A stretch of DNA of 52,042 nt, the filler included, from Bipalium vagum (Eukaryota): NCBI GenBank assembly GCA_037834085.1. It is 3 parts of 3 records of this genome, joined end to end, with 100 filler letters (N's around TTAATTAATTAA, not from the genome) between each part and the next. Parts side by side here need not be neighbours in the genome. Positions count along the whole stretch, not along the records: positions 1 to 17,288 come from JBBMKC010072559.1; 2 more parts are not named here. The stretch is one strand, 5' to 3'. The notes under the pieces were generated by a model, which did not search any database, was not told the origin of the DNA, and saw nothing but the letters and a program-made list of their open reading frames with translations. The position numbers were made by a program, and so were the translations under genes. Below, piece by piece: positions 4,245 through 11,600 of the stretch (its first letter is position 1; every line of letters begins with the position of its first letter).

Positions 4245-6182
4245 TTTTTTTATACACCTTAGCCAGTTTACACGCCGGTGGTGGCCTAGACCCCACATAC
4301 CCCGTATGAGCAGAACATACAACAAATAGTACACCAACACAACCCCACCCATCACCAAACATCAAACAATCAATCATACAATCAATAAATCCAACAGACA
4401 TTCCTAACAGAACAGGAAACGGAAGAAATAAAAGAAAATAACATAAAACTTACCTAACTTACCTGCCTCAGGGGTATACATTTTGACCAGGTCCCCTTTC
4501 CCTGGTCTTAAATGACCTCAGGTTCCTCCCTAGCCCAATCGCCGGACACCCGTACACTTTTCCCTCCCTGCTCGACAGAGATCCAACACCACTCGCCGAA
4601 CAGAGAATCGAGCCCTAAGGATGGCTGTTTCTTAGGGCGTCCGTACGGCCACACATTCAGTTCAATGTACGTCGACCAGATCCAGATACGGCATGCCTGA
4701 ATCGAATCATCGCAGCAGAGCCCTCCAAAGACCTCACAGTCATTACCTTCAGGTCCCCGAGCGTGAACCCGAGTTCCTTGAGTAATAACCATGTGCTATA
4801 ACACCAAGCTCCTCTCCAATTGAGTTTTATACCTGCTAAAAAGGGTACACTCGTCCCGCTGGGGTCTACATACCGATGTACCGCGCTTATATCATATTTA
4901 CGGACCTTGATCTTATTATCTTCCTCCAAGTTTACCAAACTTGAGTCGCTGACAATCTGGGCATCTAAAACGAGAGGAGGAACACCGTCCTTAAAGGCTA
5001 CGATATCAGGCTTTAGAAAACTGCTGTTATAGGGGATTTTCGGTTCGACCTCGACCCGATAGCCTAAGGCTTTAAGCTGAGCCACCACATAATCGACTAC
5101 ACGATTGCGCTTCCAGAGACGCAGGCCTTTTGCAGCACCACATTCCTGGAGTATATGGTTGAGGCTCTCGAGCTTGTCACCACAGCCTTTATCACAGAAT
5201 GGGCTCCCAGAGCCAGCTCTACCACTTAATGCTCTTGTCGCAGTATGAATCAGGTTACTCCGAATCCTGATCACGTAAATATAATCTTTCCCGCTCATAA
5301 GTTTGGTACCATTGCTGACCCTCGAATGCACCCCTGGGACTCGATCCATCTCCGCCAATCCTTTTCCGTCCAACAACATACACGCAGAAACGCGACAGTA
5401 GTCGTTCATCGATCCCGCTTCGTCAGAGCCCACCACCAACGGTTCGTTCCACAATGCGACCTCCTTACCAAACTTCAGACACTCACCTGCCGCACACACA
5501 GCCGGGTCAGTGCTCTCAGCCAACTTCGCCAGTCGCCGTGCCTTTCCGAAGTATACTGTAACCAAGAGTGACGGCAACCCAATACCACCATCCGACACTC
5601 TAGCATGGATATACGCTGATGTCGTATCACTTGGTAATTTCAGCCATTCACGAACTTTCTGCCGCATATACTTATCGAGCGTTCTCAACTCGGTTGAGGT
5701 TACCGATCCCAACACCCGAACATGTTGGACCTTAGGGATCAGGTAGTCGCGGAGGAGCCTTTGAAAGCCCACCTAAACCCCTCAAGATCAATCGACTAAA
5801 ATCCTCTTTGACTGAACCCTTCGCCGAGAATCGAATACCCAAATACTTATATTCATTGCCGGCTGAGTGACACGACCACGGGTAAGGTGGCCGCCTCACC
5901 AACAACCGGCTCGGAGTTCGGAGGATCCTAAATTCAACGGTAATTCTGAAGTTGTCTTAATCTGAATTTCTCCTCACTTTCTGTGCCATGCCATATGGAT
6001 AGCCAGACCCCCTCGGGCCTTTGCAGACATTCGGGTAGATCGTACACCGAACCTCAACTCCGTGGGACGCCTCAGACTCGTCTTCGTCTTGAACGCCCAT
6101 GAATGCAAGTGTGGAGACTACGACCAAAGCCACCAAAGCCATCTGTTACAATTCAAACAAACTCAATCCTTCCAATCAACCC
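4245..6182 (-). mobile_element. R2-clade non-LTR retrotransposon, internally deleted
   Basis: GC-rich island. N-terminal C2H2 finger (CTIYPNVCKGPRG/LAIHMAWH across a frameshift, about 5980-6050), RT motif 7 YKYLGIRF (about 5830-5855), thumb LRDYLIPK, CCHC knuckle CDKGC..ESLNHILQEC, REL nuclease EPKI..KPDIV..LDAQIV..KVRKY and LNWRGAW; 3' UTR ends in a short A run near 4245-4251. Confidence 0.9.
4657..5772 (-). CDS. C-terminal part of R2-like ORF (thumb, zinc knuckle, restriction-like endonuclease)
   Basis: 371-aa ORF in the track with CCHC and PD..D..K motifs; RT core absent, so probably non-functional. Confidence 0.85.
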   Translation of the reverse strand: MGFQRLLRDYLIPKVQHVRVLGSVTSTELRTLDKYMRQKVREWLKLPSDTTSAYIHARVSDGGIGLPSLLVTVYFGKARRLAKLAESTDPAVCAAGECLKFGKEVALWNEPLVVGSDEAGSMNDYCRVSACMLLDGKGLAEMDRVPGVHSRVSNGTKLMSGKDYIYVIRIRSNLIHTATRALSGRAGSGSPFCDKGCGDKLESLNHILQECGAAKGLRLWKRNRVVDYVVAQLKALGYRVEVEPKIPYNSSFLKPDIVAFKDGVPPLVLDAQIVSDSSLVNLEEDNKIKVRKYDISAVHRYVDPSGTSVPFLAGIKLNWRGAWCYSTWLLLKELGFTLGDLKVMTVRSLEGSAAMIRFRHAVSGSGRRTLN

Positions 6183-7179
6183 GGAGTAATGACATTATGC
6201 TGATAATTGTGATTCTTATGATATTTGACAATTATGTACTGATCTTTAATTGTGTAATATTCTCTGTAGCAGTGTTTAACATTATTTATGGCAGTGTATT
6301 GGCCTTTTATTGCTTATAATTTCAAAATATATGTATTGTAAAAATCGATTTTGACAGATTTATATAAAATAATAAATAATAAAACGATAATTAAATAATA
6401 AACAAAAGGAAGTAAAATATCATAATAAATAAGATAAGGTATAATAATAACATGTATAAATTATTATTAACATTAATATTAGTTGTGATTATATTTTTTA
6501 AAAGAAAATTTATAATAACGTAACATCAAGTTACCATTAATAGAAAACAGATCAGAAATTTTATATTAAAAAATGAAAAAATGGTAAAAATGGAAAAAAG
6601 AAGGATAACAGAATTATATTAAGAAAGAGAAAGTTACTAATTATGGAAGAGAAGGAAAAAAGAAGTGTATAAAAGCAAACAGAAATTATAAGAAGGGCAG
6701 AAAAAAAAATAATGACAGTTTATAAGAATCCAAAGCAGACGAATTCAAACGAAGTAGAACAGACCAAAAACTACAGAATACAACTATTCAATAATCTAAT
6801 CACAAACCCACAGATTGAACTCAGTCAGCTGTATAAACCTACAAACCAAACTCAGCCTAAAAGTGACTACCACTTATGACTCTAATACATTCCATTGTTA
6901 CGAAGGACTTGTAAACGCCAATTCGCCTACGGATATTGACTATTTAAAGGGTCGACAACAATCAAAAAATAGAAATAATAAAGAAAAAGTAAGAGCATAA
7001 AAATAGAGAAAAGAAAACCTCAAAGATCTTCAATCAGCGCTAAAGACAGGACGAATACGAAAACCCGACTAAACTAAAGGCAAGCAGAACATTGAATCAC
7101 TGAAGAGAAAAGGAACTTACGACGATCAAGTGGACCAATATATGACAATTGTTTTGTTGATAAAGTAAATTTCATAATT

Positions 7180-7426
7180 GATAACTTGTTACATCATTGT
7201 AACAAAGTTTTAGTATTCAATAAATTTTAACTAACGTTTTATATTATTACTATCTTAATTTTAAATTTTGTCGTCAATTTTAAGTATTTCAAACATTGAT
7301 TTTGGTCGTAACGATTAGAAAAGTTTTAGTGAAAAGAAATTGATTTAGTAATCTATTATTCGATTAAGTTATCCTTTATTGATACTTGTTACATTCTTGT
7401 AACAAAGTTTTATTATTATTAAATTT
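7180..7426. repeat. Pair of about 45-bp direct repeats 200 bp apart, each with a palindromic core
   Basis: acttgttacatcattgtaacaaagtttta at about 7184 and acttgttacattcttgtaacaaagtttta at about 7384; core ttgttaca-N4-tgtaacaa. Confidence 0.8.
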
Positions 7427-8134
7427 ACACCTATATCAATAATATAATATAAAACTAGCTCGGAACCCAAGGTTCACAAGACTAGTCTCAATTTTCAATA
7501 AATAATTATATTTCGTTCCTTTATTAAGCAAGCGTGTCTTGTTAGGCAAGACAAAGTTTGTCCTAACTAAGTAAATACTCAGGCCAGGACCTGAGGATTA
7601 TATAACTTTTTAAGTTCCCATTTCTTATTACTTTATTCTTTTTTCTTGTTTTTACTTCATACACTAAGTATGGTGGTGAAGTATATTTTTTCTTCATATA
7701 TTGATGACCTCTGATCCTAAGAGCGAGGAGATTTTTCTAAATAATAATTATAATTAATAAAATCATTTTAAACTCTTTAAATCAATCAGAACAGATATCA
7801 CGCAGTTTTAACTTTATTTTGAATAAAATAAAAGTATTAAAAAGTCAAGCGTTTTCTTAGTTATTTCAACCGAACACATAATAAGCAACCTTCACTCGTT
7901 AAGGCCTAAGCATCATAGTAAGCTCCACTTGTAACATCAATTTAACCCATCTTAGGATCTTAACACAAGCTAAATTAATAGTAGTGAACTTTTCATGAAT
8001 TGCACGAAGATGTGTACCCAGCCGAAACCGAGTATGTGTTTCAGGTGATTACAGGGTCGATGCCATCCCTGTAACCACCCTAGCCCTGGATCGGCTTTTA
8101 CGCGGCTATCAACCATCGTATCCTCCAACCCTAA

Positions 8135-8228
8135 CCACAGTCAAATTGGTCCCTATTCAGGTTAACAACTCCACCGCGAGAAGGTTTTGATCATGGGCTG
8201 ACCCAGGCAGGCCAGTTTTGTCGGAGTC
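8135..8228 (-). ncRNA. HDV-like (CPEB3-type) self-cleaving ribozyme
   Basis: Minus strand folds as P1 GACUCC/GGAGUU (G1-U wobble), P2 CCAUGAUCAAA/UUUGACUGUGG, P3 ACC/GGU, L3 UUCUCGC, J1/4 GU, short P4 CCU-GAAU-AGG, J4/2 CCAA, all in the correct order. Confidence 0.75.
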
Positions 8229-8613
8229 AAAACTGACTATAAGTCAGTAGATGCATAATCTAAAATTAACTATATCACAATTTTACATGTTGTCAACCTA
8301 TATGTGACAATAGTTCAGCTAAAAATCTAAATATTCAAAGATTTATATACTTGTAAAGTTAAAGTTTTAAAGCTACTTAACTGATACCATATAATATTGC
8401 ATAACTTTTATATAACCAAGATTTTAAGGTTATTTTGTTTTATTAAGATATTTTGGTAAATTGAGAAAAAATAAGTTCTATTATTATTCATAATTTAACA
8501 ATATAAAAATACAATTTCTCACTTCATCTAATAAATCTAAATACCTAATATTTGTTTTACTACATAATAACTATTGAACTAAACATTCATAGTGCATATT
8601 TAAATTTCTCTAA

Positions 8614-11600
8614 ATGACTAATACGACTAACCTTTCTCGAGTTCCTTCTCGTAGATTGTCGTAATAAATGATTGTTCTATATTCGCATAAATTAGTTTTT
8701 TTTAATTTTCAGAACTAGTGGTATTAGTCTGTATGAAATTTTAGAAATAAACAAAACTGCAACAGAATCAGATATTAAAAAATCATACAGAAAAGTGATT
8801 GATAAATATTTATCTATCTTGAACCATAATATTTTCCAAAATTCTAGCTTGCTTTAAAATATCATCCTGATAAAAATGCCAATGAACCTGCGGCTACTGA
8901 AATGGTATTGTTTAATGTTTATATTACAACCACTTATTTTAGTGTTTAGTTCAGAAATATTAACAGAGCTTACTCAGTTTTGATCGATTCAAGAAAAAGA
9001 AATTTTTATGATAAATATGGATCACTGGGATTACAGTTTTTAAATCAAATGGGCGAAGATAATGCACAGTTCGTATTAAAATCCGCACATCCTTGTTTTA
9101 AGGTATTTATTGATTTTTTTATTGAAATACATCTGAAATCTTAAATTAGTAAAGGTATTTAACCGTCAGAAATAAAATTTTAATTTATTTTTAAGATTAT
9201 TATTCATTTATGTTTTGCTTATTCGTAAAAGTATATATCAGTCGTGTCCAGTTTACATTTATTGGTCGAATGTGGATAAATATCATTTATTTAAGAACAA
9301 TCAGATTCACATAAATTTAAATTATATGTAAGACTAATAAAATACACTTGACAAATAGAGCAATATCAGTATAGAATCAAACCTCACAGAAAACCGAAAA
9401 AACAAATAGATGTTAGCTAAAGCGTAAATATGACATGTGACACTGATTAATGTTAAAATTAATGGTATAATTCGGTCTGGGTTACTAAGTAGACATCGAA
9501 TTATGGATTGCAGTTGCTCGTTTGTCAACATCAAGAAAAAGCTCTTTGGTAGGAGAGCTCAGAAGTTTTTAAAATATTTCTGGAAAGTGAAATCTTCCTG
9601 CAGATCCATTAGGTCAAGCTGCACATCTTATTGGTACATCTTTATGTGAACTACAAAAGGATAAGTAAACCAATTAAGCTTTCTTTAGAAAACTCTGAAA
9701 ATTTTGTTTTTTTTTGAAATTTTTTTTTGAAAAAACGTATCTTTTTGGTGCCTGTTATGAAAGTCTATCAAATAGTTCTTGAGATACAAAAAACCAGGTT
9801 GTGTGAATATTTCTTTTTTAGGCCCAGTGAGCACCTAAAAATTAGTACTATATATTTTTGCCCGTTTACCGTACACTCTGGACATTTATAATTAGTCAAA
9901 ATTCAACACCTTTTTTCGGCTTTTCAAATTTGGTTTATGTTAAAAATAAAGTCTGAAATTCCATAAAAATTGATTTTCAGTTACTGAAATAATTTTTCAA
10001 GCAGGATTGTTCTTAATCAATTAATATCATAAATACATCCGTTGTCAATTTCTTTTTCTCAAATATTTTATTTTTCAATGACAACTGTTTAGTTTGTTTT
10101 GATAACAATTTTAATTTTCTCTATTTCGAATGAAATTTATTGTCTTTTTCAAATTTAAAGTTTTCTGTTATAAAGATAAAACTTTTGATAAACAGTCAGA
10201 AATATTCATAAAATAATTTATTTTGTTCTCTGCTTTATTTAATACGAATATCAGACATTTGAATATTATATTTTACCGATAATGTTGCGAAATAATAACT
10301 GGATCTTTTGTTTGAACACTTAAACCTATTCCACAACACGGTCATCACATTCGATTTTATTTAGAAAAATAATAATTATTGTTAGTATTTCGACTTTAAT
10401 TATTAAAATCATATGAAAGAATGACATGATAATTATTTCATGTGAACAGTGTTGAATTTCAGAATAATTATTATTAATTCTCTCAAAGTCTGATATTTGA
10501 AATTCTGGGTGTATTTCAAATAAAGAGAGAAGGTTCTAATTGAAATTTCCAAAAATACGAAGTTGAGAGTTTGTGAAATATTTAACTTTTTGTGAGATCA
10601 AAATAAAAATTCATTAAATTTCTTAACGCTGCGCAGTCTGGCATATTTAGATTTAATGAAATTTTGGTTTTTGAATTACCCAAAAATTATGTATAGAATA
10701 TTTCTCTTAGAAAATGAAAACCCATATTTTGAAGTCATAATTCAGTTCTAATACCATTGACTGAAATGATGTTATTTTGCATCAGTGCTATAAATTTCAT
10801 TGCTAAATTCGAAGTTTCACACGCTAAAACAATATTTTCATTTCATTTAGACAAGACAATTATTAATCTTGTTTAACAAGATTTATATTTATTATATTTT
10901 TAAATAAAAAAAACAGTTAAAAATTATCTAAGTATATATGTAATGCAATTTCCTAATACAAATTTAGCGTAAAAAGGCTAAAAGAATTAATGCAAAAAGT
11001 TTTGAAGATTTACGATCCAGAATTATTATGAATTCTACTAAAAATTCCGCGAATATTGCAAAGATTTTAGGTTTGAAATGAACAACGGTGTATTCAATTA
11101 TTAAGAAAAATCAGATCACTGATAGTAGTAAGTTAGAAACAAAAGGTTCTCATCGTCCAAAAGTTACAAGTGTGGAAGGGGAGGGGAGGTACAAATTCGA
11201 GAATAGGTTGTTGTCAATTGTGCTTTAACATTGGCAAAAATATCCAGAATGTATGAAAAAAAGGAGTTAAAATATCACCAACAACTGTGTATAGAAGATT
11301 AAAATGGTTTCATTATACCCTTAAAAGAATACACAGCATGCCTGAACTCCGAAATTTCCTCGTCACCATTGAAAAAAGAGTATTTTATTCAGCCTCATTT
11401 TTGGATGACTGTTTTTGCAAAGGATAAGATAATAGATGTTTCGATATGCTCAAGAGAGAGATGATCTTTGAAGGGTTCTCCGGCAGCATTAAATGTCCCA
11501 GGATTAAGATCAAGAAACATCTCTTGCGGAGCTATGAATGTGATGGACTATTATACTTTGGAAATAGAATCAAAGCCTATAATACAGAAAGTTATATTTC

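What the first reader, a model, noticed from the sequence alone, without database searches (positions are those of the whole stretch)
8135..8228. HDV/CPEB3-like self-cleaving ribozyme about 390 bp upstream of, and divergent from, DNAJC5
Seen: all elements of the nested double pseudoknot in order on minus: G1-U wobble at the predicted cut site (5' of 8228), 6-bp P1, 11-position P2 with one mismatch, P3 ACC/GGU, L3 UUCUCGC, GU after P1 (single-pair P1.1 as in CPEB3), short P4, J4/2 CCAA with the putative catalytic C. Known: such ribozymes process 5' ends of R2, R4, RTE and L1Tc elements. Caveats: P1 is one pair shorter than canonical and P4 is weak. Inference: it could cleave divergent transcripts from the DNAJC5 promoter region.
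Basis: partly seen in the sequence, partly recalled or inferred. Interest (0 to 1): 0.8.

Follow-up and report, generated by a model that had tools for sequence, protein, structure and literature searches.

The report
R2 retrotransposon's 5' HDV-like ribozyme relic
The predicted self-cleaving RNA fold is real, but it is the ordinary 5' end of a dead, dispersed copy of an R2-type jumping gene and not a device serving the neighbouring DNAJC5 gene.

Summary
A generic HDV-like descriptor hits only this site in the window and none of 100 shuffles.

The fold is the first 94 nt of a repeat with at least 77 genomic copies. Homology to the other copies begins at the predicted cut site, G1 at 8228.

The repeat is an R2-clade non-LTR retrotransposon. 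It spans 8228-4245 on the minus strand, is internally deleted, and is split by a nested 1.86 kb repeat. Its 371-aa ORF matches Bombyx R2 protein residues 739-1105 (E 8e-41).

An intact relative in the same genome (1061-aa ORF, 53% identical) sits at the R2 site of a 28S-like sequence. It carries a homologous ribozyme with compensatory changes in P1, P2 and P4, and its P1 uses 28S bases. Five ectopic copies of that relative all start at its G1 and carry 12 nt of 28S-derived sequence, which is a genomic record of cleavage at G1.

Rfam models miss the fold. No RNA data were available, so activity of this copy is untested.

This is a new member of a known kind: R2 ribozymes (Eickbush 2010 and 2013) and non-target-specific R2 families (Kojima 2016). 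No evidence supports a role at the DNAJC5 promoter.

The parts
8135..8228 (-). HDV-like self-cleaving ribozyme fold (94 nt), with the predicted cut 5' of G at 8228
   Evidence: Sequence read. Unique descriptor hit. Own covariance model scores 110 bits here. 88-93% of pair cells are paired, against 26-52% when partners are slid.
8223..8228 (-). P1 5' strand GACUCC. It pairs with 8172-8167 (GGAGUU). A possible 7th pair is G7(8222).U56(8173).
   Evidence: C6-G57 becomes U-A in the 28S-type relative in 5 sequences. G1.U becomes G1-C in a subfamily.
8197..8222 (-). J1/2 insert (26 nt) with a 7-bp hairpin at 8215-8198
   Evidence: strand folding. The 28S-type relative has a different hairpin, a 5-bp stem with a GAAA loop, at the same place.
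8186..8196 (-). P2 5' strand. It pairs with 8145-8135.
   Evidence: Four P2 pairs show changes on both sides. This copy has one A.C mismatch (8191/8140), which is G-C in the family consensus.
8173..8185 (-). P3 (ACC/GGU) enclosing L3 (UUCUCGC). Together they form the core motif CCUUCUCGCGG.
   Evidence: This is one base away from the most conserved R2 ribozyme motif, CCUCCUCGUGG, quoted in PMC5035012.
8166..8172 (-). P1 3' strand GGAGUU (8172-8167), then G (8166), which forms the single P1.1 pair with C at 8180
8152..8161 (-). Short P4: CCU[GAAU]AGG
   Evidence: Predicted. U-A becomes C-G as a compensatory change in 4 copies of the 18-sequence alignment (seen in more copies).
8146..8149 (-). 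J4/2 CCAA, with the putative catalytic C at 8149
   Evidence: The C is nearly invariant among copies and is identical in the 28S-type relative.
7969..8134 (-). Rest of the element's first 5' UTR segment
   Evidence: Contiguous in other copies with 6106-5852.
6107..7968 (.). Nested insertion of an unrelated, very abundant ~1.86 kb AT-rich repeat. It is not part of the R2-type element.
   Evidence: Other R2-type copies join 7969 directly to 6106. The insert alone has thousands of first-look candidates.
5852..6106 (-). Second 5' UTR segment of the element. It is followed at about 5851 by an internal deletion that removes the N-terminal zinc finger and most of the RT.
   Evidence: other copies continue with sequence absent from the window. 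Searches show that the YKYLGI region is retained.
4245..5850 (-). 3' part of the element: the end of the RT, the CCHC motif and the restriction-like endonuclease (ORF 5772-4657, 371 aa), then a 3' UTR ending in an A7 run (4251-4245)
   Evidence: PDB R2Bm residues 739-1105 match at E 8e-41. The 3' end is conserved and followed by unrelated flanks in other copies.

Best explanation
The 94 nt at 8228-8135 (minus strand) are the HDV-like self-cleaving ribozyme at the 5' end of an R2-clade non-LTR retrotransposon. The family is dispersed and not specific to rDNA.

In the active source elements the RNA is made as part of a longer transcript. The double pseudoknot folds, and the J4/2 cytosine together with a bound Mg2+ catalyse attack of the 2'-OH of the upstream nucleotide. 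The RNA is cut immediately 5' of G1. The released RNA, which begins with the ribozyme, is then copied by target-primed reverse transcription, so full-length DNA copies begin at G1.

The window copy (8228-4245) is a dead relic. It is internally deleted and split by a nested repeat. Its ribozyme keeps all core residues and has only one P2 mismatch, so it might still cut any transcript that reads through it. Nothing suggests a host function.

Shown here: the fold, its homology to R2 ribozymes, the covariation, the repeat boundary at G1, and the R2 identity of the ORF. Inferred: the catalytic mechanism (from the HDV/R2 literature) and the activity of this copy.
For: 1. All motif elements are present in order, with a unique descriptor hit and 0 of 100 shuffles.
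2. At least 40 BLAST copies and 77 covariance-model hits exist in the genome. K-mer depth in a DNA run jumps from about 25 to 400-2000 at about 8228.
3. In 19 aligned copies the upstream flanks are unrelated and homology starts at GACTCC.
4. The downstream ORF is R2-type. The window ORF matches R2Bm 739-1105 at E 8e-41. The intact relative L041 matches R2Bm at E 2.5e-124, with RVT_1 and an N-terminal C2H2 finger.
5. In L041 the homologous ribozyme lies at the junction with a 28S-like sequence (Rfam LSU hit), and its P1 is GACUCUU/AAGAGUC, built from 28S bases.
6. Five of six L041-type 5' ends lie at non-28S sites and all start at that G1, carrying the 12 nt GACTCTTTTAAG.
7. Covariation: 93.4% of cells are paired against 31-52% when slid. 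There are 29 double-change cells against 12.6 +/- 2.7 in shuffles, in P1, P2 and P4.
8. Literature: R2 ribozymes have a 6-7 bp P1, a variable or absent P4, a J1/2 of tens to hundreds of nt, and cleavage at 0 or 9-36 nt upstream in 28S, including -13 (PMC3774820). Non-target-specific R2 families exist (PMC5035012).
Against: No Rfam family (HDV, CPEB3, drz-Agam and others) matches, even at E<=10 in a 600-nt search. Those models omit the pseudoknot, and Rfam returned no R2 ribozyme family either.

MFE folding without pseudoknots prefers another nested fold, with a z-score of only -1.5.

No RNA run holds the locus, so neither transcription nor a 5'-OH end at 8228 is shown.

Most within-family variation is decay of dead copies. 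The covariation therefore rests mainly on two lineages plus a few subfamilies, not on many independent events.

The window copy has an A.C mismatch in P2 and only 6 certain P1 pairs.
Confidence: 0.9

Rival explanations
1. In this dispersed family the uniform 5' end at G1 is set by an internal promoter starting transcription there. The ribozyme fold would then be an inherited, no longer used fossil of the rDNA-specific ancestor.
For: A family that inserts outside rDNA cannot rely on rRNA co-transcription and needs some promoter. L1Tc combines a promoter and a ribozyme in the same 77 nt (PMC3383444, listed). No copy of the window-type family was found in an intact 28S context.
Against: Subfamilies of the dispersed family show pair-preserving changes: P4 U-A to C-G, P2 U.G to C-G, and P1 G.U to G-C. 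This suggests the fold was still selected while the family spread. L041-type ectopic copies begin inside 28S-derived bases, where a promoter start is unlikely. A promoter and a ribozyme are not mutually exclusive.
Confidence: 0.08
2. One reading: a ribozyme retained or used by the host to cleave divergent (upstream antisense) transcripts from the DNAJC5 promoter region.
For: The element points away from a DnaJ/CSP-like gene whose J-domain exons lie at about 8845-9090 on the + strand. The core residues of this copy are intact.
Against: The site is one of about 50-80 near-identical dispersed repeat copies with unrelated flanks. The copy is internally deleted and carries a nested repeat. No RNA evidence exists. 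Conservation is explained by the recent common origin of the copies.
Confidence: 0.03
3. A chance resemblance: the pairings are fortuitous and the RNA does not fold as an HDV-like ribozyme.
For: Rfam finds nothing. MFE folding does not recover the fold. P1 and P4 are short.
Against: The repeat boundary falls at G1. A homologous core with compensatory P1/P2/P4 changes lies at an R2/28S junction. The core motif is one base from the published R2 ribozyme motif. There were zero descriptor hits in shuffles.
Confidence: 0.02

Closest known systems
R2 retrotransposon HDV-like ribozymes (Eickbush & Eickbush 2010; Ruminski et al. 2011; Eickbush, Burke & Eickbush 2013, PMC3774820)
   Same: Position at the extreme 5' end of an R2-clade element. 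Double-pseudoknot order. A core P3/L3 motif one base from CCUCCUCGUGG. A 6-7 bp P1, a long J1/2, a short P4 and a J4/2 C. In the intact relative L041, P1 is built from 28S bases, with the cut 12-13 nt upstream of the junction, as in the -13 sites of Nasonia vitripennis and Tribolium B.
   Different: In the window family the P1 5' strand (GACUCC) is internal to the element and the copies are not in 28S. The P1' strand has co-changed (GGAGUU/GGAGUC against AAGAGUC). Activity has not been assayed.
[quoted passage not shown] 2016, PMC5035012)
   Same: An R2-clade ORF, dispersed insertions with unrelated flanks, and coexistence with canonical 28S-inserted R2 and other 28S-targeting elements in an AT-rich genome.
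   Different: The organism and identity with a named family could not be established here. That paper's main text describes no ribozyme for these families.
CPEB3 ribozyme (mammalian intronic HDV-like ribozyme)
   Same: A 7-nt L3 of the form UUCNCGY, and 'GU' after P1, which gives a single C-G P1.1 pair.
   Different: No homology or Rfam RF00622 hit. The context differs: a retrotransposon 5' end rather than a conserved intron. There is a long J1/2 insert, and P4 is much shorter.
HDV genomic/antigenomic ribozymes
   Same: The same topology and presumed chemistry: a catalytic C in J4/2, a G.U at the base of P1, and a U...G reverse wobble in L3.
   Different: There is no J1/2 insert in HDV. HDV has a two-pair P1.1 and a long P4. 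It is viral and belongs to no retrotransposon.

Membership tests
HDV-like self-cleaving ribozymes | Nested double pseudoknot with strands in the order P1-(J1/2)-P2-P3-L3-P3'-P1'-P1.1-P4-J4/2-P2' | tested here: met
   Pair counts are: 88-93% paired, against 26-52% for slid controls.
HDV-like self-cleaving ribozymes | Cleavage site immediately 5' of a G that opens P1 (G.U or G-C closing pair) | tested here: met
   G at 8228 pairs with U at 8167, and the pair is G-C in a subfamily and in L041. Repeat copies begin at this G.
HDV-like self-cleaving ribozymes | Conserved active-site residues: C in J4/2; U, C and G of L3 (reverse wobble and P1.1) | tested here: met
   Present at 8149, 8182, 8180 and 8177. 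Invariant or nearly invariant in alignments A1 and A2.
HDV-like self-cleaving ribozymes | Helices supported by compensatory change among homologues | tested here: met
   7 pairs with double changes in P1, P2 and P4, and a covariation score of 0.268 against 0.175 +/- 0.014. This rests on two lineages plus subfamilies, so there are few independent events.
HDV-like self-cleaving ribozymes | Match to curated covariance models (Rfam HDV, CPEB3, drz-Agam and others) | tested here: not met
   Searches gave no hit. These models cannot encode the pseudoknot, and Rfam returned no R2 ribozyme family, so this is weak negative evidence.
HDV-like self-cleaving ribozymes | Mg2+-dependent self-cleavage yielding a 5'-OH and a 2',3'-cyclic phosphate | not testable with these tools
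   No RNA runs were available. The only evidence is the indirect genomic record of 5' ends at G1.
R2 clade of non-LTR retrotransposons | A single ORF with an N-terminal zinc finger, an RT, and a C-terminal CCHC motif plus restriction-like endonuclease, homologous to R2 proteins | tested here: met
   L041 has a 1061-aa ORF with RVT_1 and C2H2 and matches R2Bm at E 2.5e-124. The window ORF matches R2Bm 739-1105 at E 8e-41. The window copy itself lacks the N-terminal two thirds.
R2 clade of non-LTR retrotransposons | Site-specific insertion at the R2 site of the 28S rRNA gene | tested here: not met
   Window-family copies have unrelated 5' and 3' flanks, and none was found in an intact 28S context. 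The relative L041 is at the R2 site of a 28S-like sequence. The window family therefore fits the 'R2NS' type of PMC5035012.
CPEB3 ribozyme family | Homology to the mammalian CPEB3 intron ribozyme (Rfam RF00622) | tested here: not met
   The resemblance is limited to L3 and the single-pair P1.1.

The most novel reading that the evidence does not exclude
A lineage of R2 that escaped rDNA specificity kept a working HDV-like ribozyme, and its P1 5' strand is a fossil of the 28S -13 cleavage site that has been internalised into the element. If so, this genome preserves both stages: a 28S-inserted R2 that cuts inside 28S, and dispersed descendants that start at G1. Ectopic copies carrying a 12-nt 28S tag act as a natural map of the in vivo cleavage site. 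That would illustrate the route proposed in Figure 8 of Eickbush et al. 2013 and tie it to loss of target specificity.
Probability: 0.45. Interest if true: 0.45.

Novelty: new member of a known kind. Interest (0 to 1): 0.35.

Why it matters
The finding shows that a motif read by eye was a genuine HDV-like ribozyme, and it explains why it is there: it is retrotransposon baggage and does not regulate a gene.

For ribozyme and transposon specialists, this genome offers paired rDNA-specific and dispersed R2 lineages with homologous ribozymes. It also holds ectopic copies whose 5' ends record the cleavage site, including a 12-nt 28S tag. This material is useful for studying how R2 cleavage sites move and how target specificity is lost. 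It does not open a new class of system.

Tried and rejected
- Rfam at gathering and at E<=10 found no ribozyme family, only chance hits.
- Pfam on the 371-aa window ORF found nothing. The PDB sequence search resolved it as R2.
- MFE folding of the nested part does not reproduce P2/P3. It supports only P4 and the J1/2 hairpins.
- The RNA-run search found no RNA holder. The one run laid (X1) consists of contigs of unrecorded library type, and it gives only a repeat-depth boundary.
- I looked for a full-length intact master of the window family. All copies examined are broken or deleted.
- I looked for window-type copies in an intact 28S context and found none. One degenerate case, L097, has a 28S-like upstream flank.
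- No target-site duplication or target consensus was evident at the window copy. Flanks are simply AT-rich.
- I did not run the large protein searches, because the protein was already identified.
- The organism was not identified. The AT-rich genome, multiple 28S-targeting elements and an R2NS-like family recall a planarian, but that is only an impression.

Full report
**The observation.** On the minus strand from 8228 to 8135 the sequence contains, in order:
- P1 5' strand GACUCC.
- A 26-nt J1/2.
- P2 5' strand CCAUGAUCAAA.
- P3 ACC.
- L3 UUCUCGC.
- P3' GGU.
- P1' GGAGUU, giving a G1.U wobble.
- GU, of which the G can pair with the C of L3 to give a single-pair P1.1.
- A small hairpin CCU[GAAU]AGG, which is P4.
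- GA-CCAA, which is J4/2.
- P2' UUUGACUGUGG, which gives 11 positions with one A.C mismatch.

I wrote a simple descriptor for generic HDV-like constraints and scanned both strands of the 17,288-nt window. It hit only this site, and it hit nothing in 100 block shuffles. The descriptor was written after I had seen the candidate. Rfam finds no ribozyme family here, at gathering thresholds or at E<=10. MFE folding without pseudoknots prefers another nested fold. Both results are usual for this class of RNA and are weak evidence.

**What the site is.**
- A search of the window's own genome with 8300-8100 (minus strand) returned at least 40 copies at 83-94% identity. In nearly all of them homology begins at query position 69-77, which is window 8232-8224.
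- An alignment of 19 copies with their flanks shows unrelated upstream DNA. The repeat starts at GACTCC in 12 of the 19 and in the window copy. Four more copies have an altered first base, and three are short by a few bases.
- A covariance model built from the copies finds 77 sites in the genome.
- In contigs of a public run of unrecorded library type, summed k-mer depth rises from about 25 in the unique flank (8229-8700) to 400-2000 inside 7969-8223.

The predicted cleavage site is therefore the 5' boundary of a repeat with about 50-80 copies.

**Anatomy of the window copy.** Comparison with other copies shows that the window copy runs 8228-7969 and is then interrupted by 1.86 kb (7968-6107). 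That insert is itself a very abundant unrelated repeat. The copy continues at 6106-5852, has an internal deletion at about 5851, and continues from 5850 to an A7 run ending at 4245. The 3' end is conserved among copies and followed by unrelated AT-rich flanks.

**The element is R2-type.**
- The 371-aa ORF at 5772-4657 carries a CCHC motif and a PD..D..K-type endonuclease region. It matches residues 739-1105 of the Bombyx mori R2 protein (PDB 8gh6, 8ibw) at E 8e-41.
- At least 120 related protein matches occur in the genome.
- One relative, contig C200135 (L041), has an intact 1061-aa ORF that is 53% identical to the window ORF. It has RVT_1 and an N-terminal C2H2 finger and matches R2Bm at E 2.5e-124.

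The repeat is an R2-clade non-LTR retrotransposon, and the window copy is a dead, deleted one.

**The comparative test.** Upstream of the L041 ORF lies a 28S-like sequence (Rfam LSU hit) that ends in ...GTAACTATGACTCTTTTAAG, which is the R2 target site. It is followed by a ribozyme with the same core as the window: ACC-UUCUCGU-GGU, GU, and GGGGA-CCAA. The helices differ as follows.
- P1 is GACUCUU/AAGAGUC (7 bp), and its 5' strand is made of 28S bases.
- P2 is CUCCUU[AU]GCUAAA/UUUAGCAAGGAG.
- P4 is longer.
- J1/2 holds a different hairpin with a GAAA loop.

I counted pairs on an 18-sequence alignment of both lineages. 93.4% of cells are paired, against 31-52% when the partners are slid. There are 29 cells with changes on both sides, against 12.6 +/- 2.7 in shuffles (0 of 500 reach the observed value). 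The double changes include P1 C-G to U-A, P2 C-G to U-A, and P4 U-A to C-G. The covariation comes from two lineages plus a few subfamilies, so independent events are few. Even so, they fall in all three variable helices.

**A genomic record of cleavage.** Six L041-type 5' ends exist in the assembly. One is in the 28S-like context. The other five have unrelated upstream flanks, and all begin at G1 of GACTCTTTTAAG, so they carry 12 nt of 28S-derived sequence. RNA cut by the ribozyme inside the 28S part of a co-transcript and then reverse-transcribed to its 5' end would give this pattern. It parallels the -13 cleavage sites shown for Nasonia vitripennis and Tribolium B R2 (PMC3774820).

The window family's P1 strand GACUCC looks like a descendant of the same 28S bases, now internal to the element. 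One degenerate copy (L097) still has a 28S-like upstream flank. No window-type copy sits in an intact 28S context.

**Comparison with what is known.** Eickbush, Burke and Eickbush (2013) describe R2 ribozymes with the following features:
- a 6-7 bp P1;
- a P2 of at least 5 bp, often with mismatches;
- a P4 that ranges from absent to long;
- 23 to more than 700 nt between P1 and P1';
- cleavage at the junction or 9-36 nt upstream in 28S.

Kojima et al. (2016) quote CCUCCUCGUGG as the most conserved R2 ribozyme sequence. The window has CCUUCUCGCGG, the family consensus has CCUUCUCGUGG, and one copy has the exact motif. The same paper reports non-target-specific R2 families in a planarian and a fluke. 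In the planarian they coexist with canonical R2 and other 28S-targeting elements. The window family fits that type. I could not identify the organism or name the family.

**Mechanism and status.**
- Shown: the fold, the homology, the covariation, the boundary at G1, and the R2 identity.
- Inferred from the HDV/R2 literature: the ribozyme folds co-transcriptionally, the J4/2 C and Mg2+ catalyse cleavage 5' of G1, and the released RNA serves as the template for target-primed reverse transcription.
- Unknown: whether this copy is still active. It keeps every core residue, has one A.C mismatch in P2, and has 6 certain P1 pairs. No RNA run was available.

A role in processing divergent DNAJC5-promoter transcripts is unsupported. 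A DnaJ J-domain is encoded at about 8845-9090 on the + strand, but the ribozyme is there because a retrotransposon landed there.

**Verdict.** The ribozyme call is supported and the functional inference is not. This is a new member of a known kind (R2 5' ribozymes in a dispersed R2 family), of moderate interest mainly for R2 and ribozyme evolution.

Noticed in passing
window 6107-7968: A nested copy of a very abundant ~1.86 kb AT-rich repeat (3650 first-look candidates; copies 75-91% identical) splits the R2-type element. Its type was not determined.
   Followed up: partly
L068, L070-L072, L074, L076, L077, L084 (other contigs of the same genome): 28S-like fragments stop at ...GTAACTAT(GACT), just upstream of the R2 site, and are followed by diverse unrelated sequences. 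In L076 and L084 the fragment spans LSU model positions ~1906-2346 and is bounded by non-rRNA DNA on both sides. In several of these loci a second, more diverged copy of the fragment lies ~300-360 bp away with the same downstream sequence (tandem units). They may belong to other 28S-targeting elements.
   Followed up: no
L066 and L073: A 28S-like sequence ending ...TTAAG is joined to a different element start (GGCCGATATATTGACTCCC...). This is probably another lineage inserted at the R2 site.
   Followed up: no
L081 versus L041:3955-4050: A canonical 28S fragment (702 bits to the eukaryotic LSU model) is only 94% identical to the AT-richer 28S-like flank of the intact R2. The genome or assembly therefore holds two versions of this normally invariant region. 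Which one is functional, or whether one is foreign, is open.
   Followed up: no
L075: The 28S-like sequence is interrupted near the R2 site by a short T-rich insert (TTTTTG-type repeats) and then resumes with ...TAAGGTAGCCAAATG.
   Followed up: no
window 4500-6000 versus the rest: The element's coding part is about 50% G+C in a window that is otherwise 17-37% G+C. This is a sharp compositional island marking the retrotransposon.
   Followed up: yes
L099 (C197745:1950-2100): An L041-type copy starts at G1 but has the ribozyme core deleted. Its upstream flank resembles the antisense strand of an R2 ORF, so it is an R2 copy inserted into, or recombined with, another R2 copy.
   Followed up: partly
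window 8845-9090 (+): Exons encode a DnaJ J-domain (..LALKYHPDKN.. and ..YDKYGSLGL..) that resembles cysteine-string protein. The first exon and the exact distance to the ribozyme were not determined.
   Followed up: partly
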